A stretch of 40,019 nt of DNA, from the NCBI GenBank assembly GCA_002269645.1, contig NIVC01004636.1, positions 1-40,019 of the forward strand, read 5' to 3'. How positions within the stretch are numbered: position 1 is the stretch's first letter; each line of letters starts with the position of its first letter. Shown here in pieces: positions 545 to 34,959 of the stretch. Source of the stretch: Macrostomum lignano. Taxonomy: Eukaryota. A program made the translations under genes and the position numbers. The notes beneath the pieces are model-generated. The model did no database searches, was not told the DNA's origin, and saw nothing but the letters and a program-made list of their open reading frames with translations.

Positions 545-548
545 GAAA
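545..548. other. Target-site duplication, left copy (GAAA)
   Basis: GAAA directly before the LTR start matches GAAA at 13484-13487. Confidence 0.85.
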
Positions 549-2533
549 TGATGGGTTTCGACCTTCGACTCCTTGTTAGGGAAGCCTTCGGGCCTCAGGC
601 TCAGAAATAAATCAATTAGAGACCTGGCCCCCCACTCCTGTCAGATGGTCAGCCCCATGGTAGCTTGATCGTGTGGCGAGCAGTCTAGGTCCTATAGCTA
701 AGAGAGGGACAGCGAGAGACGAGCAGGGAGAATTTTGAAAGTAGAAATTAGCTAATCCGCAGATCAACTAACTTGCTGCCACCAGCCCGTACGCCCTGGC
801 TCACCACACCGGGACTCTCGAAATCGGGCTTCCGACTAGAAGGGGCTTTGCACTTACCTGCCAACTAGTGTCTTTTTGCTGTCAATCTCGAAGTCATAGC
901 CGATGTTAAGGGACACTGCTGGGACTAGATCGCGTTGGCCATGCAGGTACAGAGGGGACTTGTGCAGGGGATTCTTGCGGTGGCGAGTCTATGGGGTAGC
1001 TACCTGTACTATTACATTGCTAAATACGAAGATATGTACTTTTGGCCTTCAACGCGCCAACTAGCCTCTCATAGCGCTGATGATAGACTGACTCGAACTT
1101 CAGAGACCGCATGATTCATTTACCCGAGCCGCTTGGCTACCCTAGAGTGCACAAAGTACATCTCTGGCGCCGATCCTGCACTTCTGGCAGTTTTGCTCAC
1201 TGATTTGATAGATTGGTCGACTGAGAACTGCCTTGCCATTGGTCCACTGTGACCGGCGCCTACTAGCCTAGCTACTCATCTGAGCCATCGGCGAACAAAG
1301 AAATAAAACCGACAAAAATAACTGTTAGATTTAACCTTCTCCTTAGTTCACTTCACACCTCGGATTGAATTGGAGTCTTAGACTACTAGCAGTATTATTG
1401 AATGATTCCTGCCTCAGCAACAGCACTACTGAACAAAATGAGCAAAAGTGTGCGCCTAATTCAGCTACTGCAACAGGGGACAGATAAGGGATCACCCAAT
1501 CAAGCAAGTCTAGGTAGCCTCTCACCCAACCAATCAGAAACTCAACAGCCGGAGACCAGGTAATCCACAGTGACCGAATCGGCTCGATGCTCTGCAGCTG
1601 TAGACTCGGAATGATGCTGTCACACTCTTCGCTGTTAGCTAGCAGGTGATGCTCTTAACTTGATGTTCGCTGCTGTCGACCGGGGGACTCGTCCTTGATG
1701 ATGATGGGGGAAGTCGCAATCCGGGGATCAAGAAACGACGGTCGTGCTCTGGGAACCAGAAGTTGCGCGCTGGGCCCGAGCCAAAGTTGAGTCCGAGCGG
1801 GCCAAAAACTCCGGTTTAAATAGCCGCCAACTGGACCGCAGTTTGTTATAATGGAACACGTCGATTCTGATTGGCTGAGCCGTTTTGTTAAAATGAGCGC
1901 CGAATTTTCTGATTGGCTAAGCTTGTTGCTACCCAGAATCACGTGACCGAGAGATCCTATCAGTTCCCACAGGGTCGTAAAAAGATGACAGGTGCGGCCA
2001 TAAATCACTCAAAATCGCAACAAAATGATTTATGACTTTTCGCGTAGGATTGACAGAAATTAATGAAAAAATATACATTAGAAAGCTCTTATTAAATAGA
2101 AAGTGAAGATAATGAAGAGAAATCGCTAATCGCTAATCCCAAGGTACTTTTAGGGGTAAAACGCATAGCTGTCAAAGCTGTCACACGCTTGAGTGAACCG
2201 AACAATAGGCTCTGACCTCGTAAATCTTGATGGCCTGTCAAGATAATGAGAAAAAAGCTACCGCCCGCATCCTCTCAGACCATCTGGCGCCCGCTTCAAC
2301 ACTGAGTGAGGCGCAGGTGGCTGTCAGACCAACTTTGAAAGCGATGATTTATGACCCAAAAAGCTGCGCCTATGTTATTATGACTACTAGTATGACCAGA
2401 CATTATATCTAGTATAGTTTCTATGAAAATTCGCAGAAAAAGGATAAAAATGCCCATTGCCCACTGTTAGTAGGCAAGTAAGTTTAGAGCCCATGTGCTA
2501 GCGCGGGATTTGGGAAAAAGTGCGTCCTCATCA
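549..2533 (-). repeat. 3' LTR (1985 bp)
   Basis: By eye it differs from 11498-13483 only by three 1-nt indels (near 566, 1268, 2198). The ORF track gives identical peptides in both copies. Confidence 0.97.
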
Positions 2534-2536
2534 TAT

Positions 2537-2549
2537 GCCCCCCCTATTT
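2537..2549 (-). other. Polypurine tract
   Basis: Minus strand AAATAGGGGGGGC, 3 nt before the TGATG start of the 3' LTR. Confidence 0.8.
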
Positions 2550-4469
2550 GTGAGTTGATCGCAGATTAACTCAAAAACAAAGAAGAAAAATGAGCGCAGT
2601 TTTGTACAAAATCGCAGCTAGCGCATCGAAAAGAGTAGTAAAAATAAAACTAGTTACTCACAAATAGGTATTAAAAATATTACACTAATACGCATCCCAA
2701 GAATGGAAATCCCAAAAGAGAAAGAAATTGGGGAAAGGGAAGGATTTGAAGAAAGAAAGGGATCAAGAGAAAGGTGCTTCAACTAAATATTGCATTGCAA
2801 ATACAGTATCAAGTGCGAGATACACGTAAGGGGATAATAGACAGATAAATTATTGCCACGCGAGAAGACAAAATTCAAAATGTGCGAAATGGAATAAACA
2901 GCGCATGTTCGATGAGACTAAGCTTCATTGTTCGCGTTCGAGTCAGTCTCGATTCTACCTGTTAAGCCTCTTGATGGCTTATTTCCTTCGCCGCGCGGCC
3001 GACCCGAGCCAGGATGGGCGAGGAGCTTGGGAAATGCGTTGCACATTCTCCCCTCCCGCCTGTGGAGTCCACGTGCCTGGGGTTGCCGTGCTCATCTGGC
3101 GGCAGCCGACGAATGGCGACCCTCAGAGGATTAAGGGACCCTCGAGTCATCCTTGCTGACTGGCTGAGACGCTGCTGGGGGAGAATGATCTCAACCACCT
3201 CGAGTTCGCAGGGAGATAAAAGCGACTGACCACTCAGGTCATCCACAAATTATGATTTTCATCTTCAAATCCTGCGTCAGCCTCCGATTTGCCAGCCAGC
3301 GCTTCGCCACCACCACCTTTGCTGATTTTGCACCAAGCCAGGCCAGCCACTGCAGACCTCCGATCTTCAACTGGTAAGTCTCATCTCAGCTCTGTGATTC
3401 TCTACTGTACACGTTACTCAATCGGATAATCCCAGACCCATCCCACAGTCTCAGCAGCCTTCAGGGTACACTCCCTCCTACTCACTTGCCCATTCAGTGC
3501 TGTGCAGATAGGTACTTTAAGATGTATTATTAATAGAGTTTCAGATAAGAGGCAGAATAATTTTGAGCACTAGTGTTAAATTTTAAAAGTTCTTTCAAAG
3601 ATTTTTGTCTTCAAGACTCCGCTTCAATGGCATTCACTTTCAAATTTAATTCACACAATCCTATTTTGTTTTACACTCAGTATTACTACATATCAGTAGT
3701 ATCGCACGGCCGCGAAATTCAGCTTAAATTTATCACTCCTAATTTGGTTTAGCAATTCGTATTAATTCAGGTGGACCATTCGTACCTTATTTAAGACTTT
3801 TATTAGTTTAATTATGCCTAGTATTCTTCTATATTAATGACCTAATTCGCTCATCGTTGATCTCTTTCTTCGCCTTGGCTCAGTGAGTTTAGTAACACGA
3901 GAAGTCCTAAATTTCAGTTTCAAACTTAACTCAAACCAAGGTTCAATTTCACATTTAATTTCAAAAGCACTCACGACAAATTAAGCACAATAAGCAAGCA
4001 GTCACATTCACGCACACAACATATTGTTTCCGCCACCATTTGATGAACCTTTTACGCAAAAAAATGAGCAAAGAAGAAATTAGGCAAGACAAAATAAGCA
4101 ATGACACAACAGAGAGAGAAATACGCGGAGATAAATAGTGGCACAACATTGAGTATAAATATAAAAAACGCATTCTCAAAGCACCGGGGGGTATTTACAG
4201 GGGAATCGGGGGTGCAAAAGACAGTATGAGCAAGCAATAGTTCACGCAATAAGGGGATATATTTACAAGGGGCATAGCAGCACAAAAAAAGAAAAATAGG
4301 GGGTTCGAAATTTGCTCCGGCATGACAATAACTTGGTTAAAAGTTGAACATGTAAATATAGGTACTATTCGTTAACTAATCACTTGAGCCGAACGACTTA
4401 ATCGAAAGATTACGTAAAATATTTTCCCTAATTAAAAGATTGTTTACATCAGTCCCTCCCTTGGTCTTC

Positions 4470-5636
4470 TCACTCTTGGTTGGCATTCTGGCTTCGCTGA
4501 TGCCTCACCGCCAGGCTCAACTCCCAAATCTTCTGGGCGGCTTCAAGAGCAGCAGACCTCTTGAGGACCGAACGCGGGGGGTCCTCGCCGCGGTGGAAAA
4601 CGTCGTTGAGCAGGTCGTAAGCGAGCCTCAAACGGGGGTACCCGGCCCCGCGCACCAACTCATTGTAAAGCTGGTTTCGCTCGAGCTGCTCGGGCGAAAG
4701 CAGCCAAAACCGCTCGTTAGCCGGGACCACAATCAGACGCTCGCGCAGGCGCTGGGGGCAGGGCTGCAGGAGCGGCAGGCCGCCCCAGTTCTCGGGGGCC
4801 TCGCCGACTGCCAGTATCAGCACCGTCGAGTCCAGACAGTCTTGCAGTGCCAGCTGTGCGGCCCATTCGCCCGCTTGGTGAGGCGCGTAGATGAGCAGCG
4901 CTGGCGTGAGGTCGGTAGCCAGCGCAAACAGACCATCATGGAAGACGATAGTATCGGCGCCGCGTAAGCCTAGCACTAGTCGGGCGTACATGACCATCTG
5001 TAGAGCCGTCAGATGGACTTCGTGCCGGCTCAACATGGAGATGATGTTCGCCGCTGCAGCCGGAGTCAGGCCACGATCGACCGCCGCCGGATAGGGGAAG
5101 GCGAGCAGCTGGGCCAGGTACATGACCGCCCGCCCCGGGTTGTTCAGCTGTAGCGGGGCCAGCCGCTGGATTAGATTTGGCCACCTCGTCGCTGTCGGCC
5201 ATGGGCCCGCACTTTCAACCTCGCGGAAGTGTCGGCTCAGCGCGTCGTAGGCCTCGCCGATGATCACGCGCCATAGGCTGTTGTCGACGTCGGCCCAGGA
5301 GTAGGCCAGCTCCGTGCCCATCAATGTTGCCGCTCGAGCGTGGGCAGCTCTTAAGGAGTGTCTCTCATCGATAGCTTGCTGGGCAGCGGGTAGCAGGGTG
5401 TAGTGCAAGGGACCCTCTCCATGAAGGCGGGTGCCCAGCTGTCCCAGCACTCGCTCCTTCGCATTTTGCTCAAGCTGTTCGTGTCTCTCTTCGCCTTCCA
5501 GGTGCCGTAGACCACTCAGGATGGCCGGACGCTCTCCCGTGCTCCCCAGCCCGCCTCGGCTGTGCGGACTGGTCGCGCCGGACGACAGCGGTGAGTGCAC
5601 TTCTTCTTTGATAGCGCTAACCAAGAAGGCTTCCAT
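4470..5636 (-). CDS. Unknown intact ORF3 of the LTR element (388 aa from the first ATG)
   Basis: Long, GC-rich, stop-free ORF with normal protein composition, where pol/env would lie. No signal peptide, TM segment, YXDD, DDE or zinc motif recognised. Confidence 0.7.
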   Translation of the reverse strand: MEAFLVSAIKEEVHSPLSSGATSPHSRGGLGSTGERPAILSGLRHLEGEERHEQLEQNAKERVLGQLGTRLHGEGPLHYTLLPAAQQAIDERHSLRAAHARAATLMGTELAYSWADVDNSLWRVIIGEAYDALSRHFREVESAGPWPTATRWPNLIQRLAPLQLNNPGRAVMYLAQLLAFPYPAAVDRGLTPAAAANIISMLSRHEVHLTALQMVMYARLVLGLRGADTIVFHDGLFALATDLTPALLIYAPHQAGEWAAQLALQDCLDSTVLILAVGEAPENWGGLPLLQPCPQRLRERLIVVPANERFWLLSPEQLERNQLYNELVRGAGYPRLRLAYDLLNDVFHRGEDPPRSVLKRSAALEAAQKIWELSLAVRHQRSQNANQE

Positions 5637-6134
5637 GTCTTCGCAGATGCACAAAGCTCTCACTTATAAACAGAGGATCACAGCTAGCAGAATGCTTTTA
5701 GCTCGCAGAAAGTCAAATTGAATTACAGTCAAAGTTTTCCTTTTTGTATTCGGAAAAAATCAGATAACAGTAAACAGAGGGTGGGGCGACTCCACGTCAG
5801 AGTCACCCTCAGATTGATACAAATCATTTGGGGCGCATAGTAGAAAAAACTCATTATGAGGGCCAATAAAACATTTGAGCTCAACAGACCGTCAATTTTT
5901 TGCAAGAGGAACAAAAAACGAGGGTTACAATGGGGGTCGAAATGTGCATGGGGTGCATGGGGGGGGGGAAGGAGAACGGGAGCGGGGACCAGAGGAGGGA
6001 AGAGATGAGGGATCCCTGCAGACTAGCTGGGGGACTAAAAATAGCTACGGCGGATTTCCCCAAGTGAAGAATTGGCTCCTCAAAGTTATGTTAATTGGAC
6101 TATGAACTCAAAGCGATTCAGAATTTCAAGCTAA

Positions 6135-6731
6135 TCCCAATCCTGGCAGCTTCAATCCCTCTCTACCCCTAACCTGCGTCTACCTTTCCACCTCACACCC
6201 GCAGAGGGCGCGCTAATTCTACAACAGAGCCTTATCCTGGGCAAGAGGCTCATTCATGGCGCATTCTCAGTCCTGCCAACAGAGGTGATAGCCCATGGAG
6301 ACGGCCAGCTGACACTCCGGCCCCGAGCCGGGACTGCTGCTCCGCCTCTAATAGAGGCCACCTTTGCTGACCGCGGCGTGGCTGGACCCGCCCGGAGTGG
6401 AGGAGGTCGCAGCAGCGGTCGCAGTCGGGGTCGGGGCACGCCCAGTAGCAGCGGCACCCGCCCAACTACCGCGGGCACCTCTACCCCCATCGGACACTAC
6501 AGTGCTAGCACACCGGAGGCCTCATCAATTTCCGCCTTGGACTCCATTCAAGAGGAGCCCTCAGGTGCGCCTTCCGGTGCTCAACCTGCGGCACCCGCAA
6601 CAGCTGACCTCTCGGTGCGGCTGCAGCAACACGCTAGCGCCTTGCAGGCCTCTGACCATGGCTGCCCTGAACACGACCGCACCGTCGAGTTGTTAATGCA
6701 GGCGGCCGCCCAGCTCAGCGGTGCCAACTAA
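6135..6731 (+). CDS. Antisense open frame in the element (198 codons; S/G/R/P/A-rich with a helical C-terminus); start uncertain
   Basis: Stop-free 6135-6731. Candidate acceptor cccgcag at 6204; in-frame ATG at 6102 is cut by TAA at 6132. Followed by an AT-rich 3' region and AATAAA at 7031. Confidence 0.4.
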   Translation, partial: SQSWQLQSLSTPNLRLPFHLTPAEGALILQQSLILGKRLIHGAFSVLPTEVIAHGDGQLTLRPRAGTAAPPLIEATFADRGVAGPARSGGGRSSGRSRGRGTPSSSGTRPTTAGTSTPIGHYSASTPEASSISALDSIQEEPSGAPSGAQPAAPATADLSVRLQQHASALQASDHGCPEHDRTVELLMQAAAQLSGAN

Positions 6732-7106
6732 TTCTCTATTCATGTGCCTAAGGGTTTCTGCCCTTTACCACACCACTTTCACCTTTCATTTGTCCATAAA
6801 ATCATTATCGTATTAATTGCTTTTAGATAACTTCCTAATGCCTTTCTTAATTATATAAAACGCTGCACCAGTCTATAGTATCTGTTCCTACCATTAATTC
6901 TATTAGCTATTTTAAATATACCATTTCAGCGTTAACTGCTTCATTTATAATTTGTTCTAAGAGCTTCCAATTGTTCTAAGAGCTTCATCTATTTCCTCTA
7001 TACGTCCAACCTGTCATAATACTTTCACGAAATAAACCGGATCTAGCAGAGGATAAGCAAGGGGAAAAGCGAATCGGGCCCCCGACCTTCAGAGTTCTTC
7101 AGGAAG

Positions 7107-7612
7107 TCAACAAAATGGGAGCATTTGCCCCAATACTAATAGATTTCTAGTGTGGTAATCCAACACAGCAGGTGCTGCTGCGAGGAAAGAGTTGCCCAAC
7201 AGAGGCCTCGTGCCGGGGTCACTGGCAATCAGGAACATGACAGGCATGGTCTCACTGCCTAAGATGACTGTCAGCTTAGATTGACCCACAATCTCCAGTC
7301 TATGCCCGCTATAGGAATAGATAGAAACTGTAGGGGCCTCCAACCTGTCCATATCATCGTTAGTGGCCGCCACAAAGTCTTTGAAGGGTAAGATGGAAAC
7401 TGCCGACCCAGAATCGATTAAGATTCGGACTGGCAATCTCTCTACTTGAACTTTTACATAAACATCAGCTCGAGAGCTTCTAAATGATACAGACTTCCTA
7501 GGGACAATGAAATCGGGTACAAGATTCATTTTCCTTTTGCCACTGTTTACTAAATTTGCCCTTGAAAGTACAGAAGAGGGGTGAGTGTGGGCGCCACCCA
7601 TCCCTACTCTCA
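7107..7612 (-). CDS. Retroviral-type aspartic protease, in the -1 frame relative to gag, ending in a clean stop
   Basis: ILIDSGSAVSIL active site and a C-terminal LLGNSFL...VLDY motif. The -1 frame is open across the gag stop. An in-frame ATG also exists at 7601. Confidence 0.88.
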
Positions 7613-7619
7613 GTTTTCC
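7577..7619 (-). promoter_or_regulatory. Putative -1 programmed ribosomal frameshift signal
   Basis: G_GAA_AAC immediately before the gag TGA, then a 7-nt spacer, then hairpin AGGGAUGGGUG-(GCGCCCA)-CACUCACCCCU (11 bp with one A-C mismatch and one G-U pair). Confidence 0.7.
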
Positions 7620-8779
7620 GAACCGGCTGGCCCAGACGGAAGATATAAAGAGGGCCGCTGTCTCTGCGTTCCAGGCGCCGGGGTTGGCGGGGGGCTCCAG
7701 CTCTCTTCTCCTACTCTGCTCTCTCCCTGGGTAGGAACACGCAAGGGAGGCGGGCGCGCGCGTGCACTGTTGCGCAACTGCGGGGGCCGGTAAATCTCAG
7801 TTTTTTCAATCTGCTTGGCCGGGTCACCATAAATCGCATTCTGCCTCTGTAGCACGGGCTTCTCTGACAGATTTTGAGATGAGGGGGGCGGAGACTTGCC
7901 CTCAGGCGGTTGGCTAGCTCGCTCAGTATCTTCTACCACTGTGAGGTCTCCCTCCCAATGATCTGAGTGGCTTATCATGGCCCGATCGATCTTCTCCGCT
8001 ACCTGACTCATAGCGCCGTAAATCTTGCCGACGGTTTCATCAAGGCTGTTTTGGCGCTGCTGTAAATCTGTCAATGCCTCTTCTACTTCCCTTCCTTCCT
8101 CTGACTCCAGCATGCGGACCCACCTGCGCTGATATTCTCTGTCGCTGGGGCGATTTTGATCTCTGTTTCTCTCGTCCCTACGCTGATCATATCTGGGCTG
8201 GTCTCGCGCTAAGCGCCGGGAAATCTCATCTGCCTCTTGGAGATTCTGCTGAGCTGCCAGCACTTCATCAATGCTGCGAAACTGTTGCCCTAGCAGCGAC
8301 TTGCGCACATCTGGGGCAATATCAGCCGTTTCCAAGTAGGCGAAGATCACCTCCGACTCTAACTGTCTAGGACTCATGTCGGGGTAAGCAGAAGCTATCA
8401 CACTACGCACCATGGCCGAGTAGGCGTGGTGATTCTGGCCTGCTTTCTGTTTCAAATTCCGGACTTTGTTCCTCTTCGCTAATTCTGAACTGGCCTCTCC
8501 TACCTGGCGACCTAACCTTTCTATGAATTCTTCGAAGTCAAGGCCGGGATGGAGGGCAATAGCAAGACTCTGCAGATCTGGGGGGAGGAGCGAGATTACT
8601 GTGCTCTTCTTCTGCTCTCTGTCCCTAATCTCTTCAGATCTGAGTTTGAATTTGACTCTGTCAACCCACTGTGGGAAGCAGGATTCTGCTGGGTTGAATT
8701 TCTCAACGCTAATCTTGACACTCTGTGTCTCTCTGCCCAATCCAATAGCTGCAAGGGCTTGCGCTAATTGGGCTGCCAT
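7610..8779 (-). CDS. gag: Gag-like capsid protein (389 aa)
   Basis: Intact ORF first after the PBS and leader; ATG in gacATGG context. Retrotransposon Gag-type N-terminal region (VEKFNP...QWVDRVKFKL...VISLLP), R/D-rich and coiled-coil segments, no CCHC knuckle. Confidence 0.8.
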   Translation of the reverse strand: MAAQLAQALAAIGLGRETQSVKISVEKFNPAESCFPQWVDRVKFKLRSEEIRDREQKKSTVISLLPPDLQSLAIALHPGLDFEEFIERLGRQVGEASSELAKRNKVRNLKQKAGQNHHAYSAMVRSVIASAYPDMSPRQLESEVIFAYLETADIAPDVRKSLLGQQFRSIDEVLAAQQNLQEADEISRRLARDQPRYDQRRDERNRDQNRPSDREYQRRWVRMLESEEGREVEEALTDLQQRQNSLDETVGKIYGAMSQVAEKIDRAMISHSDHWEGDLTVVEDTERASQPPEGKSPPPSSQNLSEKPVLQRQNAIYGDPAKQIEKTEIYRPPQLRNSARARPPPLRVPTQGESRVGEESWSPPPTPAPGTQRQRPSLYLPSGPAGSEN

Positions 8780-11477
8780 GTCGGCGGCTTGGGGTTGAGG
8801 TGGGGCTCTCTGCGGTGATGATCCGCACTCTGATCGCTCGGGGAGCCTGAGCCCTGGGACGAAAAATCGCAGGCGGCTGCGGCGGCGGCTGCTGATCCGT
8901 TCCTATTCCCTCTACCTCTTCTCCCTCTACCTCCTGACTTACTGGTACTGGAATTACATGTTTCCATAGTTCGGGCACAACACCAGTTGCCGGGACAGAA
9001 CTAAAGGATGAAAATCTGAACCGGGGCGGAAAGAATGAATGCAATTGGCTACTAGCCGAAATTGGGTGTCTGCTTCAAAGCAAGACAATGGCAATGAATC
9101 GAATCGAATGGGGGAAGGGGGGGGAGATTGTGCAAAAAGCCTAACTGGGGTAGGGTTTTGACACAAGTAAGCAATGGGGGGTTGAGCGCCGCGAGTTGGG
9201 GAGCTCAAAGCAAAAACAATAAATTACAAGCAAAAATAAGCAAAGTGCATAAAACACGCAAATAAGCAAAAGATACGCGATCTATATACAAAAAGCGTAC
9301 AATACGAGCGCGGGGCTTGCGATAATGATCGCAAACACAGCACAAAAAATGAAAAAATACGCAAAAACCAACGAAGCGGAAACTTCACTTATTCCACTCA
9401 CACCGCAGTCACACTTGACTCAAATTTTTCACACCTAAAATCCTTCTGTCTCTGCCTTGAATCCGATCTCGGATTTTCTCGAATCGCTGCTTTTAAACTC
9501 ACTGGTTCTCAACTGGGCTAAGGCCACAGCTTTCCGCAGGCTACTACAGTCTCAGTCTCTCTTTCTCTCTGAGCGGCTCTTTTTGCTTCCGAATAATTTT
9601 GATGGGCTAGTAAATCATGGAGGGTCTCATCAGCTCTCATTAGTCTAAATTGCAGGCGCCAATATGTGGGCACCTCATGTGTATCAGAGCTCTCCTGCGT
9701 GGTATCGCCACTAGGAAACCGTCCGGGTGCTGCTACGGCTAGACAGATTCACAATCCCCATCAAGGCTGATCTTTTAGCGGAACTTGGACGTCTGACCCA
9801 GCGCGCCCAGTGGCCCCTCTGTGTAGCTTTCGTCAGCATTGACCGGTGAGGGCGGATTACACCTAATAAACGATACTCGCGAACAGACAGATAATACACA
9901 AGGAGTTAAGCAGGTCCGTAGTGTAGTGTTCACTCCGCAACAAAACCTTATGGCACGGTCCCTAAGAATTTTGATCATAGAAAAAGCTACGGGCAGCAGG
10001 AAAGTTTGTCAAATATTATGACCCTACGTTATCGGGTCGGGTATTTTTATAGCGGCGAACCACAGAAGACATCTGTGTCTTGAGTCGGTAGAGTCTGTCC
10101 AGACAAAGCTGCGCTCCCCTCCTCTTGCTATCATAAAAATGAATAGCCACGGCGTTTTCTGCTCTCTGCAGAATCGTTAACCAGAGCGGTAGCTGGAATT
10201 CGCACATACTACCATGGCACCGTGTGGGTAATTCTCTCCGCTTTCCTTACTGTATTTACATTAGATACCCCTCCGATTCTAAGAAAGAACCGAAAGGGCA
10301 AAAGCAAACTTCCAAACCCTAAATTCCGCAACCAGGAAATTTACTTGTGCACTGGCAAACTGTACTACTGAAAGTAATACCTACACACTTCCCAGACTCC
10401 TAGGCTAAGCAGATGGTAAATGTACGAACTTAAAGTAACTTCAGACCTCACAATTCTGTACCCAAACCCAAAGTAGCGTGGCTGTTCTCGCGTTCCGGTA
10501 GCCATCAACCCCAGACATATTTTTCAGGACATGGATGTCTGACCCAGCGCATCCAGAGGCCCAACGGCACAGCACTTGCCATTGTTAGCCGGAATACCGA
10601 GAATTGCAGTGGGAATTTGAGCTCTCCGTTGCCACTTAAAGCGATTTATACCACCAAAGCCCGAAAAGCGGACAACAATTCGTGAGAAGCACTCAGATAG
10701 AACACCCCGATTTAAATCGAAATGATACTATAATCACACAGTACGCTAATCCGACTGTCCCGTACTAATCTGCTCCAGAGTATAACCTTTGAACCCAAAA
10801 CCCGTGAGGCCCTGCGTATGAAACCAAGGCTTCGCACATCCAAAAAGCTGCCTGATTCTAAATTTTGCAAACAAGACAAAAACTACGAGCGCTGTCAGCA
10901 TTCTATAATGAACGTTTTGGCCGAGGAAGCATCATCATTCGGATAATGGCCTCTTGTCTACACGACAAAAATTAATAGCTTAATTTCGAGTGATCAGTTC
11001 GAAACTTTTCTGTTTAGCAAAAGTACAAGAACTATCCTAAGTCTCTATTTTCCGCATAATTAGCTGGCTGAAATCAAAACTGGGGGAACTAAGCAGAGAG
11101 CCTAGATAACTGATCAAGCTGAGAGAGTTGTCTGTGCGGGGTTGATTTTTTTTATATGCTCTGGCTTTTTGAATTTTTATAATTTTTTTTTTTGGTTGAT
11201 TTTTTGAATAGGCATGCATTTAATGATAAGCAATTCATACTAGTAATTTTTTTGGTTCCAGTAGCATAAATTTTTTGTGCATTTTTGGACTCTCATAATT
11301 CAGACTTGAAAAGCTATCGCAGCTGACTACTTACAGTAATCTAATAAGAAACCTAAATTCCCAATTTTGAAATCTAAACGGCGCAACTCGATTTTATTAT
11401 TCTGTCACAATTTGCCATTTACCAGCCATCACTACCGGTGAGCACTTTACCACTTCCTACCGGCTAGTGTTTACCAT

Positions 11478-11495
11478 ATCCCACCGCTGCCACCA
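11478..11495 (-). other. Primer-binding site complementary to tRNA-Leu (AAG/UAG-type)
   Basis: Minus strand TGGTGGCAGCGGTGGGAT, 2 nt from the LTR. The plus strand ATCCCACCGCTGCCACCA matches the remembered 3' end (with CCA) of metazoan tRNA-Leu. Confidence 0.9.
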
Positions 11496-11497
11496 TT

Positions 11498-13483
11498 TGA
11501 TGGGTTTCGACCTTCGGACTCCTTGTTAGGGAAGCCTTCGGGCCTCAGGCTCAGAAATAAATCAATTAGAGACCTGGCCCCCCACTCCTGTCAGATGGTC
11601 AGCCCCATGGTAGCTTGATCGTGTGGCGAGCAGTCTAGGTCCTATAGCTAAGAGAGGGACAGCGAGAGACGAGCAGGGAGAATTTTGAAAGTAGAAATTA
11701 GCTAATCCGCAGATCAACTAACTTGCTGCCACCAGCCCGTACGCCCTGGCTCACCACACCGGGACTCTCGAAATCGGGCTTCCGACTAGAAGGGGCTTTG
11801 CACTTACCTGCCAACTAGTGTCTTTTTGCTGTCAATCTCGAAGTCATAGCCGATGTTAAGGGACACTGCTGGGACTAGATCGCGTTGGCCATGCAGGTAC
11901 AGAGGGGACTTGTGCAGGGGATTCTTGCGGTGGCGAGTCTATGGGGTAGCTACCTGTACTATTACATTGCTAAATACGAAGATATGTACTTTTGGCCTTC
12001 AACGCGCCAACTAGCCTCTCATAGCGCTGATGATAGACTGACTCGAACTTCAGAGACCGCATGATTCATTTACCCGAGCCGCTTGGCTACCCTAGAGTGC
12101 ACAAAGTACATCTCTGGCGCCGATCCTGCACTTCTGGCAGTTTTGCTCACTGATTTGATAGATTGGTCGACTGAGAACTGCCTTGCCATTGGTCCACTGT
12201 GACCGGCGCCTACTAGCTAGCTACTCATCTGAGCCATCGGCGAACAAAGAAATAAAACCGACAAAAATAACTGTTAGATTTAACCTTCTCCTTAGTTCAC
12301 TTCACACCTCGGATTGAATTGGAGTCTTAGACTACTAGCAGTATTATTGAATGATTCCTGCCTCAGCAACAGCACTACTGAACAAAATGAGCAAAAGTGT
12401 GCGCCTAATTCAGCTACTGCAACAGGGGACAGATAAGGGATCACCCAATCAAGCAAGTCTAGGTAGCCTCTCACCCAACCAATCAGAAACTCAACAGCCG
12501 GAGACCAGGTAATCCACAGTGACCGAATCGGCTCGATGCTCTGCAGCTGTAGACTCGGAATGATGCTGTCACACTCTTCGCTGTTAGCTAGCAGGTGATG
12601 CTCTTAACTTGATGTTCGCTGCTGTCGACCGGGGGACTCGTCCTTGATGATGATGGGGGAAGTCGCAATCCGGGGATCAAGAAACGACGGTCGTGCTCTG
12701 GGAACCAGAAGTTGCGCGCTGGGCCCGAGCCAAAGTTGAGTCCGAGCGGGCCAAAAACTCCGGTTTAAATAGCCGCCAACTGGACCGCAGTTTGTTATAA
12801 TGGAACACGTCGATTCTGATTGGCTGAGCCGTTTTGTTAAAATGAGCGCCGAATTTTCTGATTGGCTAAGCTTGTTGCTACCCAGAATCACGTGACCGAG
12901 AGATCCTATCAGTTCCCACAGGGTCGTAAAAAGATGACAGGTGCGGCCATAAATCACTCAAAATCGCAACAAAATGATTTATGACTTTTCGCGTAGGATT
13001 GACAGAAATTAATGAAAAAATATACATTAGAAAGCTCTTATTAAATAGAAAGTGAAGATAATGAAGAGAAATCGCTAATCGCTAATCCCAAGGTACTTTT
13101 AGGGGTAAAACGCATAGCTGTCAAAGCTGTCACACGCTTGAGTGAACACGAACAATAGGCTCTGACCTCGTAAATCTTGATGGCCTGTCAAGATAATGAG
13201 AAAAAAGCTACCGCCCGCATCCTCTCAGACCATCTGGCGCCCGCTTCAACACTGAGTGAGGCGCAGGTGGCTGTCAGACCAACTTTGAAAGCGATGATTT
13301 ATGACCCAAAAAGCTGCGCCTATGTTATTATGACTACTAGTATGACCAGACATTATATCTAGTATAGTTTCTATGAAAATTCGCAGAAAAAGGATAAAAA
13401 TGCCCATTGCCCACTGTTAGTAGGCAAGTAAGTTTAGAGCCCATGTGCTAGCGCGGGATTTGGGAAAAAGTGCGTCCTCATCA
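11498..13483 (-). repeat. 5' LTR (1986 bp)
   Basis: Second copy of the LTR; on the minus strand it is followed by AA and then the PBS. Confidence 0.97.
12816..12895 (-). promoter_or_regulatory. LTR U3 promoter motifs: two AGCCAATCAG CCAAT boxes and a TCACGTGA E-box
   Basis: ctgattggct at 12816 and 12858, tcacgtga at 12888; the same cluster is at 1867-1946 in the other LTR. The position fits U3 of a minus-strand element. Confidence 0.55.
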
Positions 13484-13487
13484 GAAA
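13484..13487. other. Target-site duplication, right copy (GAAA)
   Basis: Directly after the terminal TCA; matches 545-548. Confidence 0.85.
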
Positions 13488-14240: not shown

Positions 14241-21147
<6,907 letters not shown>

Positions 21148-33277: not shown

Positions 33278-34930
33278 TTAAATCGGCCTAATGCCAACCA
33301 GTTTTCTAAGCTGCTCAAAAATCATAAAAGTGATAACAGTGTGCGGCCCGATCCGCATCCAGTTCGGCACGAATCCTTTATAGAGGCCGGTCAGACCTTC
33401 GGTCCTGATGGCGGCAGCGGCGCAAGAGAACGCATTGGAATAGGCGGCTCCACGAAGGCCCACCGTGTCCTGGTTCATCACCCGGGTCTTCACTACATCC
33501 AATGGTGAGGTTGTGATGGCGCACATCAGCCCGGCGAACATGCTGGCTAGAAAGTGCAAAGGCAGGCCCTCTTTGAGCAGGCCTCTGCTCAGCATGGTGT
33601 GCTTGAAGTGATCGTAGGATGGCACCTGCATTGATGAGGGATCTTGTGTCTTAATGTGGAGTGCTGACCTGACTCTGACTCTGACATCCTCAAAAACACC
33701 AAATCTGAATAAAACATACAATTGACCCATATAAGACACAAAATCTGACTGATAAACACACTAAATTTTACCTATAAACACAGCATATGACTAATAATAA
33801 ACACAAAATCTGACCCATAAACACAAAATCTGACCTATAAACACAAAAACTGACCCATAAACACAAAAATGACCTATAAACACAAATAACGTGACTGATA
33901 ATAAATACACTAAACCTAACCCATAAATACACTAAATCCGTCTCATAAAAAACACACTTAACCTGTCCCATAAACACACTAAATCTGTCCCATAAACACA
34001 CTAAAACGGACCCATAAACACACTAAAACTGACCCATAAACACACTAAAACTGACCCATAAACACACTAAAACTGTCCCATAAACACACTAAAACGGACC
34101 CATAAACACACTAAAACTGACCCATAAACACACTAAATCCGTCCCATAATAAACACACTAAATCTGACCCATAGACACACTAAATCTGTACTATAAACAC
34201 TAAAACTGAACCATAATAAATAAACACTAAATCTGTCCCATAATAAACACACTTAACCTGTCCCATAAACACACTAAACCTGTCCCACAAACACACTAAG
34301 TCTGACCGATAAACACACCAATCTGACCCATAAACACCCTAAATCTGACCCAGCCTAACCCAAACCAAGCAGCAGACTGACCTGAGTAGCGGTGACAACA
34401 GCGGCCCGAGCTACAGTAGGCCCGATGCCTTTGTACAGCGCAGGCACGCCGCCCTCCGCATAGATACTAACAAAAGCGTGCCAGGTGCCGCGGTACCTGG
34501 CCCCGGACTCGAACGCCTGCATTCGAACTTTCACTAAATCCGTAGGCGTAGCCACAGCGCTACCCAGCACGCCGGTGACAGCGCCCGAACAGATTTTCTT
34601 CCACAACGAGAAGTTGGCCGGATCGGTCTCCCCGAACAGCCGCTTGACAGGCTCGTACAGGCCCACCCGGATGGCCCCGTAGCCGCCATCGCGCATCATC
34701 GACGGCACGACGCCTTTGTACAGACCGCGAAGGCCTTCGTTGCGGACCACGGTGGCCAGGCCGCGAATGAAACCGGCGTAGCGAGCGCTGCTCGTCCGGT
34801 TGGCTGCTTCGCCTTGGATCTGCAGGCGAATCTTCACCACGTCTACAGGATTGGTGACCACCGCCGCCGTCAGGTTGGAGCAGCCGGCCAGGCCCACCCG
34901 GACCCAGTCGCTTTCCGGCTGCTGCTGCTG
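33278..34930 (-). CDS. Mitochondrial carrier (SLC25), uncoupling-protein/ucpB-like. Exons 34930-34382 and 33625-33278; start exon not found
   Basis: Three PX[DE]XX[KR] signatures (PVDVVK, PTDLVK, PLDVVK); ATQ|VPSYDHFK junction is phase 0 GT-AG; GFVPNWMRIGPHTVITF; AATAAA just after the stop. Confidence 0.9.
33715..34352. repeat. ~22-bp minisatellite AAACACACTAAAACTGACCCAT (carrier intron)
   Basis: Direct reading. Confidence 0.93.
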
Positions 34931-34959
34931 CTGCGGGTTCACGATAATAGCAGCACCGT

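What the first reader, a model, noticed from the sequence alone, without database searches (positions are those of the whole stretch)
549..13483. Very young 12.9-kb LTR element with Gag and protease only, carrying unknown cargo ORFs where RT/RH/IN should be
Seen: all cis signals are intact (LTRs apparently differing by three 1-nt indels, TSD, 18-nt tRNA-Leu PBS, PPT). Gag and protease are intact, and the protease frame stops right at the end of the domain rather than trailing into decayed pol. No RT/IN-sized ORF exists in the 9-kb interior. Known: RT and IN are required for transposition, and Gag plus a -1-frameshifted protease is the architecture of domesticated PEG10. Inference: a recently mobile satellite element that builds and matures its own capsid, borrows RT/IN from a helper, and uses the freed space for its own genes. 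This is the best candidate for an undescribed system in the window.
Basis: partly seen in the sequence, partly recalled or inferred. Interest (0 to 1): 0.88.

Follow-up and report, generated by a model that had tools for sequence, protein, structure and literature searches.

The report
Gag-protease-only LTR retrotransposon with orphan ORF
This is a very recently inserted 12.9-kb LTR retrotransposon that keeps only its capsid (Gag) and protease genes, has no trace of reverse transcriptase or integrase, and carries one 397-codon gene of unknown origin. Helper-dependent elements of this kind are already described, so it is a good example rather than a new system.

Summary
Two 1,985/1,986-bp LTRs (549-2533, 11498-13483) differ by three 1-nt indels and no substitutions. 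They end TG…CA and are flanked by a 4-bp duplication (GAAA). The element lies on the minus strand. It has an 18-nt primer-binding site identical to the tRNA-Leu(AAG) 3' end, a short G-run polypurine tract, an intact 389-aa Gag with a capsid-like fold, and an intact aspartyl protease in the -1 frame. Profile and tblastn searches of all six frames find no RT, RNase H or integrase.

The element must rely on a helper for RT and IN, but no helper or second copy could be sought. Only one "cargo" ORF is credible: 397 aa, strong codon periodicity, host-like codon use, and no homologue among 1.84 billion representative proteins. Its function is unknown.

The architecture is not undescribed. GAG/PROT-only non-autonomous LTR retrotransposons (TR-GAG-like), gene-capturing elements such as Bs1, and LTR elements with extra ORFs are published.

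One divergent relative, a 1.4-kb Logan contig, shares Gag, the -1-frame protease and nearly the same protease stop position.

Verdict: a new member of a known kind, of moderate interest.

The parts
545..548 (.). Target-site duplication, left copy (GAAA)
   Evidence: the flank ends ...AAATGAAA immediately before the LTR.
549..2533 (-). 3' LTR in element sense, 1,985 bp, TG...CA ends
   Evidence: 0 substitutions and three 1-nt indels against the other LTR.
2538..2545 (-). PPT-like purine run AGGGGGGG, 4 nt upstream of the 3' LTR
   Evidence: the flank reads TATGCCCCCCCTATT on the + strand. It is short and not abutting the LTR, so it is a weak PPT.
4470..5663 (-). ORF397: a 397-codon orphan ORF (first ATG at codon 10) in the same sense as gag; the only credible 'cargo'
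   Evidence: one search lists the ORF.: GC1/2/3 are 0.70/0.46/0.73, and the longest ORF in 500 Markov simulations was 258 aa.: its codon use fits the host gene better than gag/PR.: no homologue and no family match.
6285..6731 (+). 148-codon ORF on the opposite strand inside a 68% GC island; probably not a gene
   Evidence: no codon periodicity (GC1/2/3 0.69/0.68/0.64). The predicted protein is low-complexity, rich in A, G, S, P and T.: no family match.
7107..7796 (-). Protease reading frame, -1 relative to gag; Pfam domain about 7457-7179; motifs DSG and LLGNSFL; stops at the end of the domain
   Evidence: gag-asp_proteas E=6e-4.: 25 protease hits, the best being P0001 at 43% identity, E=9e-23.: tblastn E down to 1.6e-31.
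7613..7619 (-). Heptamer GGAAAAC just before the gag stop; candidate -1 slip site, non-canonical
   Evidence: the same heptamer lies in the short gag/PR overlap of the relative L001 (836-842).
7688..7694 (-). C_CCC_CCG, the only canonical X_XXY_YYZ heptamer in frame within the gag/PR overlap
7610..8779 (-). gag, 389 aa: capsid-like N-terminal half, Arg/Pro/Gln-rich C-terminal half, no CCHC zinc knuckle
   Evidence: PNMA E=0.029, below threshold.: P0016 (Retrotrans_gag + zf-CCHC) E=2e-4.: 35% identity to the L001 Gag, E=2e-31.: an AF2 model with pLDDT 74 whose 50 listed Foldseek PDB hits are all Arc, PNMA2 or HIV-1 capsid/Gag-lattice entries.
8780..11477 (-). About 2.7-kb non-coding leader between the PBS and the gag ATG; the 2,718 nt from the 5' LTR edge to the gag ATG hold 36 upstream ATGs
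   Evidence: the 36 ATGs were counted over 8780-11497; no repeats were found.
11478..11495 (-). Primer-binding site TGGTGGCAGCGGTGGGAT, complementary to the 3' end of tRNA-Leu(AAG) including CCA
   Evidence: one search gives the sequence.: it is identical to the first 18 nt of the tRNA-Leu(AAG) probe in PMC7997516.
11498..13483 (-). 5' LTR in element sense, 1,986 bp
13484..13487 (.). Target-site duplication, right copy (GAAA)

Best explanation
This is a non-autonomous LTR retrotransposon related to Ty3/gypsy elements, of the 'GAG/PROT-only' type. That means TR-GAG-like coding content at LARD-like size. It integrated very recently.

Shown:
- Intact cis signals: near-identical LTRs, a 4-bp TSD, a tRNA-Leu(AAG) PBS and a short PPT.
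- An intact capsid-fold Gag and an intact retropepsin in the -1 frame.
- Complete absence of RT, RNase H and integrase.

Inferred mechanism:
- Its RNA is transcribed from the 5' LTR.
- Gag and, by -1 frameshifting, Gag-PR are translated.
- The RNA is packaged into particles that also contain the Gag-Pol of a related autonomous element in the same genome.
- That element's RT, primed by tRNA-Leu, and its IN copy and insert the satellite RNA and produce the 4-bp duplication.

The 4.6 kb that replaces pol is a compositional mosaic of GC-rich islands in AT-rich sequence. It holds one real-looking 397-codon ORF with host-like codon usage. This ORF is most likely sequence acquired by template switching or transduction, or a lineage-specific accessory ORF. 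It rides along as a passenger, and there is no evidence that it serves transposition.
For: - Structure: LTRs, TSD, termini; PBS matches the tRNA-Leu(AAG) 3' end.
- Coding: (gag, and PR in the -1 frame with DSG); the Gag model has pLDDT 74, and its 50 listed PDB matches are all Arc, PNMA2 or HIV-1 capsid/Gag-lattice entries.
- Lineage: one search hits, placed. The Gag relative P0016 and the PR relative P0005 sit next to RT-RH-IN ORFs with H2C2 integrase, which is the Ty3/gypsy-type order.
- Non-autonomy: (six-frame Pfam finds only PR). (tblastn with three Pol-bearing proteins: no match at E<2 outside gag/PR). (no Pol anywhere in the window).
- Older lineage. Contig L001 has Gag at 35% and PR at 43% identity, PR again in the -1 frame, and a PR stop within 3 codons of the same position.
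- ORF397: (length beyond 500 simulations, GC3 0.73 against 0.56 for gag, codon use nearer the host carrier gene). (compositional mosaic).
- Precedent: (28 sugar-beet families keep only GAG/PROT). (Bs1 transduction). (captured ORF3s in rotifer LTR elements).
Against: - Only one copy is visible, so family status, a helper and mobility in trans are all untested.
- The roughly 2.7-kb leader (36 upstream ATGs in the 2,718 nt from the 5' LTR edge to the gag ATG) makes ordinary scanning translation of gag doubtful.
- The PPT is short and 4 nt away from the LTR.
- No canonical TATA or AATAAA occurs in the LTR on the element strand.
- No parental gene for ORF397 was found, so 'acquired from the host' rests on composition only, and the codon-usage controls were noisy.
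- Assignment to Ty3/gypsy rests on weak Gag and PR similarity, because RT, the defining marker, is missing.
Confidence: 0.72

Rival explanations
1. A true satellite retroelement family with dedicated cargo. Gag+PR+ORF397 would be a conserved, selected gene set. ORF397 would have a function for the element, such as helper exploitation, host interaction or silencing evasion, and the family would be repeatedly mobilised by a specific helper.
For: - ORF397 is long and intact, shows codon periodicity, and has the same sense as gag.
- The Gag/-1 PR/PR-stop arrangement recurs in a relative that is only 35-43% identical.
- The insertion is very young, so the lineage is or recently was active.
Against: - ORF397 has no homologue anywhere, so conservation cannot be shown.
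- The L001 contig ends 43 nt after the PR stop, so its downstream content is unknown. It may belong to an autonomous element with pol in a third frame.
- In an insertion this young, intactness says nothing about selection.
- The host-like codon use of ORF397 fits recent capture better than long co-evolution with gag/PR.
Confidence: 0.13
2. A one-off defective product. A single aberrant reverse-transcription event, by template switching or deletion inside a particle of an autonomous element, replaced pol with unrelated RNA-derived sequence. The product integrated once and is not a propagating family.
For: - Only one copy is seen.
- The interior is a mosaic of unrelated-looking GC-rich and AT-rich blocks.
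- Pol has been removed cleanly with no remnants.
- The long, ATG-rich leader suggests extra inserted sequence that might cripple expression.
Against: - The PR stop lies at nearly the same place in a highly divergent relative. This suggests the gag-PR module with a terminated PR frame predates this copy.
- All cis signals needed for further rounds of transposition are intact.
- This rival differs from the best explanation only in copy number and history, which cannot be tested here.
Confidence: 0.12
3. An assembly artefact: a collapsed or chimeric join between two LTR-containing loci creates a false 'element'.
For: The window is extremely rich in minisatellites, a setting where assemblies can err. 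The three LTR indels could be consensus errors.
Against: - The TSDs match.
- The PBS and PPT sit correctly at the inner LTR edges on the same strand as gag/PR.
- No repeats lie at internal junctions.
Confidence: 0.03

Closest known systems
TR-GAG / 'GAG-PROT-only' non-autonomous LTR retrotransposons of plants (Coffea, Arabidopsis, Triticeae; 28 families in sugar beet, PMC13570524)
   Same: LTRs, PBS and PPT are kept. gag, and in many families the protease, is kept. RT, RH and IN are absent. They are regarded as semi-autonomous and dependent on a partner.
   Different: - At 12.9 kb with 2-kb LTRs, this element is far above the size first proposed for TR-GAG.
- It has a 2.7-kb leader.
- It has an extra 397-codon orphan ORF.
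- The host looks non-plant: its PBS is identical to the mouse tRNA-Leu(AAG) 3' end. The host was not identified.
- Family status is untested.
LARDs (large retrotransposon derivatives)
   Same: Long (>4 kb) non-autonomous LTR elements with a large interior unrelated to pol, mobilised in trans.
   Different: LARD interiors are non-coding. This element encodes an intact Gag and protease and a further long ORF.
Bs1 of maize, and replication-defective transducing retroviruses (the latter from general knowledge)
   Same: An LTR retroelement that lacks its own RT and carries foreign, host-derived coding sequence in place of pol, so it needs a helper.
   Different: In Bs1 the captured pieces are traceable to three host genes. 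Here no parental gene was found, and host origin is suggested only by codon usage.
LTR retrotransposons with additional ORFs (bdelloid rotifer ORF3s, PMC5408684; plant aORFs, PMC7264820)
   Same: An extra ORF lies downstream of the core genes, is often of foreign origin, and often has unknown function.
   Different: Those elements keep pol and are autonomous. Here the extra ORF sits where pol should be.
PEG10 / PNMA / Arc (domesticated Ty3/gypsy Gag genes)
   Same: A capsid-fold Gag: one search lists Arc CTD and PNMA2 capsid as top hits, and one search gives a weak PNMA Pfam hit. PEG10 also has a -1 frameshift into a protease (general knowledge).
   Different: Those are LTR-less, fixed host genes. 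This element has near-identical LTRs, a TSD, a PBS and a PPT, so it is a mobile element and not a domesticated gene. It also lacks a CCHC knuckle.

Membership tests
LTR retrotransposon (structural definition) | Two direct long terminal repeats ending TG...CA | tested here: met
   1,985/1,986 bp, 0 substitutions, termini TGATG...CATCA.
LTR retrotransposon (structural definition) | Target-site duplication of 4-6 bp | tested here: met
   GAAA on both sides. It is only 4 bp, so the chance of a random match is 1/256.
LTR retrotransposon (structural definition) | PBS complementary to a tRNA 3' end next to the 5' LTR | tested here: met
   18/18 nt match to the tRNA-Leu(AAG) 3' end, with a 2-nt spacer.
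LTR retrotransposon (structural definition) | Polypurine tract abutting the 3' LTR | tested here: inconclusive
   an 8-nt run, AGGGGGGG, 4 nt from the LTR. It is short and not abutting.
Ty3/gypsy (Metaviridae) | RT phylogeny and PR-RT-RH-IN domain order | tested here: inconclusive
   RT, RH and IN are absent, so the defining marker cannot be placed. The Gag and PR relatives lie in elements with RT-RH-H2C2 integrase.
TR-GAG / GAG-PROT-only non-autonomous LTR retrotransposon | Intact gag (with or without protease) and no RT, RH or IN | tested here: met
TR-GAG / GAG-PROT-only non-autonomous LTR retrotransposon | Small size, as originally proposed for TR-GAG | tested here: not met
   The element is 12,935 bp. 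notes that sugar-beet GAG/PROT families also exceed the proposed size range.
TR-GAG / GAG-PROT-only non-autonomous LTR retrotransposon | Multi-copy family mobilised by an autonomous partner | not testable with these tools
   The source genome is not searchable. There is no second copy or Pol in the window. Exact-protein look-ups found nothing.
LARD | Larger than 4 kb with a non-coding interior | tested here: not met
   The size criterion is met, but the interior encodes Gag, PR and ORF397.
Gene-transducing LTR retroelement (Bs1-like) | Interior sequence traceable to host genes | tested here: inconclusive
   No homologue of ORF397 was found. Only its codon usage and GC3 resemble the host gene in the window.
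Domesticated Gag gene (PEG10/PNMA/Arc type) | Loss of LTRs and of mobility signals | tested here: not met
   Near-identical LTRs, TSD and PBS are present.
Retrozyme | Hammerhead ribozymes in the terminal repeats | tested here: not met
   no Rfam family reached its gathering score anywhere in the window.

The most novel reading that the evidence does not exclude
The element represents a conserved family of eukaryotic 'capsid-and-protease satellites'. In this reading the family has permanently given up RT and IN and builds and matures its own particles. It parasitises a helper's polymerase and integrase, and it uses the vacated space for a lineage-specific gene (ORF397) that is under selection. 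This would be a retroelement analogue of the capsid-encoding satellites of phages.
Probability: 0.1. Interest if true: 0.7.

Novelty: new member of a known kind. Interest (0 to 1): 0.35.

Why it matters
If copies and a helper exist, this would be a clean and very young example, outside plants, of a semi-autonomous LTR retrotransposon that keeps both capsid and protease. Such a case is useful for asking three things:
- why satellites retain Gag and PR;
- how they co-assemble with a helper's Gag-Pol;
- how LTR elements pick up and spread new coding sequence.

On present evidence it extends a known category. It does not open a new one.

Tried and rejected
Searches that found nothing:
- Word-index homology searches with Gag, ORF397 and a Gag+PR alignment gave zero hits.
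- Metagenome and viral contig scans with Gag+PR and ORF397 found nothing.
- Exact-protein look-ups of Gag, PR and ORF397 found nothing on record, so copy number could not be measured.
- NCBIfam, PHROGs and PDB sequence searches gave no match at all for ORF397 and only sub-threshold, presumably chance matches (E >= 0.024) for Gag.
- Rfam found no family, so no hammerhead ribozyme and no retrozyme.
- A paper search for the run accession of L001 found nothing, so neither the host of the window nor the source of L001 is identified.

Structure prediction of ORF397:
- The single-sequence AF2 model had pLDDT 42 and is unusable.
- Its Foldseek hits are scattered. Several nuclease-fold hits were considered, but ORF397 has no (D/E)xK motif, so that lead was dropped.
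- ORF397 as Env was rejected: there is no signal peptide and no hydrophobic segment (maximum Kyte-Doolittle value 1.37).

Other ideas rejected:
- A nested insertion splitting pol: there are no pol fragments on either side and no internal repeats.
- The PR stop at the domain end as proof of a designed truncation: weakened, because the PR of a related autonomous element (L004) is also called as a separate ORF ahead of RT-RH-IN. That ORF runs 46 aa further than the window's PR, and the contig may carry indel errors.
- A TATA-like TTTATAAG sequence upstream of the ORF397 ATG lies too close to the ATG to argue for an internal promoter.
Full report
**Observation.** A direct-repeat search and a local alignment show two LTRs at 549-2533 (1,985 bp) and 11498-13483 (1,986 bp). 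They have no substitutions and three single-base indels, none in a long homopolymer. The LTRs start TGATG and end CATCA. The four bases GAAA flank the element on both sides (545-548 and 13484-13487). With no substitution in about 2 kb, the insertion is very young. I infer roughly under 10^5-10^6 years at ordinary neutral rates. The element is absent from the rest of the window.

**Orientation and cis signals.** All coding and priming signals are on the minus strand. Two bases inside the 5' LTR lies TGGTGGCAGCGGTGGGAT (11495..11478). This equals the first 18 nt of the antisense probe published for mouse tRNA-Leu(AAG), so it is complementary to that tRNA's 3' end including CCA. Its complement is also listed as an 18-nt tRNA-derived fragment (tRF) in a published compilation. 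At the other inner edge there is only a short purine run, AGGGGGGG (2545..2538), 4 nt from the 3' LTR. The LTR has no canonical TATA or AATAAA on the element strand.

**Genes that are present.**
- gag (8779..7613, 389 aa) has a sub-threshold PNMA match.
- In a full HMMER search of 1.84 billion representative proteins, gag has one distant relative, P0016 (Retrotrans_gag + zinc knuckle).
- An AlphaFold model of Gag residues 1-220 reached pLDDT 74. All 50 of its listed Foldseek PDB matches are Arc, PNMA2 or HIV-1 capsid/Gag-lattice entries, although the E-values are weak at 0.04-0.3. Viral-library matches are weaker but include several retroviral Gag and caulimovirid coat proteins among the top hits.
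- Gag has one cysteine and no CCHC knuckle. Its C-terminal half is rich in Arg, Gln and Pro.
- The protease frame is open from 7796 to 7110, in the -1 frame relative to gag, with a 62-codon overlap. It carries DSG and LLGNSFL motifs and stops just after the domain.
- Twenty-five of the 26 hits in the large search fall on the protease.
- The only canonical slippery heptamer in the overlap is C_CCC_CCG at 7694. A non-canonical GGAAAAC sits directly before the gag stop.

**What is absent.** Pfam scans of all three minus-strand frames and all three plus-strand frames of the 8,964-bp interior, at E<=1, return only the protease. tblastn was run with three Ty3/gypsy-type Pol-bearing proteins:
- the Pol ORF (RT-RH-IN) next to the Gag relative P0016 (L002);
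- the Pol ORF (RT-RH-IN) next to a protease relative (L004);
- the long protein P0002.

It found no match at E<2 outside gag/PR, within the element or anywhere in the window. The element therefore cannot reverse-transcribe or integrate by itself. Pol has left no decayed remnant.

**The 'cargo'.** The interior downstream of the protease is a mosaic of GC-rich islands (3000-3300, 4500-5700, 6300-6600) in AT-rich sequence.
- Only one ORF stands out: 5663..4473, 397 codons, in the same sense as gag.
- It exceeds the longest ORF in 500 composition-matched simulations (258 aa).
- Its GC1/2/3 values are 0.70/0.46/0.73, a clear coding signature. Its GC3 resembles the host mitochondrial-carrier exon in the window (0.75) more than gag (0.56).
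- A synonymous-codon likelihood test also favours the host model, by 34.7 log-likelihood units, but the controls were noisy.
- The 175-aa plus-strand ORF is its exact antisense shadow.
- The 148-aa plus-strand ORF lacks periodicity and is low-complexity.
- ORF397 has no match in Pfam, NCBIfam, PHROGs or PDB sequences, in the 5.8-billion-cluster index, in the 1.84-billion representative set, or in metagenome and viral contigs.
- It is predicted to be soluble, without hydrophobic segments. Its structure model is unusable.
- Its function is unknown. I rate 'acquired passenger sequence' as the likeliest status.

**Relatives.** The closest protease hit, P0001 (43% identity), lies on a 1,426-bp Logan contig, L001.
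- L001 also encodes a partial Gag 35% identical to the window's Gag (E=2e-31), followed by the protease in the -1 frame.
- Its protease ORF stops within three codons of the window's stop, and the same GGAAAAC lies in its short gag/PR overlap.
- The gag/-1 PR module with a terminated PR frame is therefore older than this copy.
- The contig ends 43 nt after the stop, so whether L001 has pol is unknown.
- Its catalytic motif reads DGG, not DSG.
- More distant Gag and PR relatives sit in ordinary Ty3/gypsy-type elements with RT-RH-IN. This places the element near that superfamily without RT-based proof.

**Mechanism (inferred).** The element supplies its own capsid protein and maturation protease, together with the cis signals. 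A related autonomous element would supply RT/RH and IN, presumably as Gag-Pol co-assembled into the same particles. tRNA-Leu(AAG) primes minus-strand synthesis. One weak point is the roughly 2.7-kb leader: the 2,718 nt between the 5' LTR and the gag ATG hold 36 upstream ATGs. This leader would need splicing or internal initiation for gag to be expressed.

**Comparison with known systems.** A 2026 survey of sugar beet reports 28 non-autonomous families that retain only GAG/PROT domains. It likens them to TR-GAG elements and notes that such families exceed the original size limits. Maize Bs1 is an LTR retroelement carrying transduced host gene segments. Bdelloid rotifer LTR elements capture diverse third ORFs. 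The architecture is therefore a combination of described features. The resemblance to PEG10, PNMA and Arc is one of fold and gene layout only, since those genes have lost their LTRs.

**Verdict.** The finding is best filed as a new member of the known class of semi-autonomous Gag/protease-only LTR retrotransposons that also carries an orphan ORF. The decisive tests are copy number, a helper, the origin of and selection on ORF397, and transcripts. All of them need the source genome and expression data, which were not available here.

Noticed in passing
window 33281-34942, minus strand: A host mitochondrial-carrier (SLC25-type) gene. Two large exons give Mito_carr hits at E=5e-44 and 6e-24. They are joined by canonical GT...AG splice sites across an intron of about 750 nt that contains a 22-bp minisatellite. 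The start-codon exon was not found.
   Followed up: partly
window 14981-39887: The flanking 26 kb is packed with minisatellite arrays. TRF reports 39 rows, for example 14 bp x77 at 15868-16943, 23 bp x79 at 17173-18902 and 26 bp x43 at 20004-21089. These arrays create many long spurious ORFs.
   Followed up: no
window 8780-11497, minus strand: The 2,718 nt between the 5' LTR and the gag ATG hold 36 upstream ATGs and no ORF of note. This leader is unusually long for an LTR retrotransposon, and it is unexplained how gag would be translated.
   Followed up: partly
window 7613-7619 and L001 836-842: The heptamer GGAAAAC is conserved at the end of gag, inside the gag/PR overlap, in two elements whose Gag proteins are only 35% identical. 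It is a possible non-canonical -1 frameshift site.
   Followed up: partly
L001 1060-1080: The protease of the closest relative reads LVDGGSA where the window has LIDSGSA. The residue after the catalytic Asp is Gly instead of Ser/Thr, so that protease may be impaired.
   Followed up: no
window 11478-11495: The + strand here reads ATCCCACCGCTGCCACCA, the complement of the PBS. That 18-nt sequence is listed as a tRNA-derived fragment in a published compilation (PMC12025293). In a host with the same tRNA, the element could be a target of tRF-based control.
   Followed up: no
window 1655-2008 and 12604-12957, minus strand: A 117-codon ORF lies inside each LTR. It has no Pfam match and no codon periodicity (GC1/2/3 0.52/0.53/0.51), so it is probably not a gene.
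   Followed up: partly
L004 7154-11613: A 12.9-kb ENA metagenome contig carries a Ty3/gypsy-type element whose protease (34% identical to the window's) is called as a separate ORF ahead of a 965-aa RT-RH-IN ORF. The frame breaks may be real or may be long-read indel errors.
   Followed up: partly
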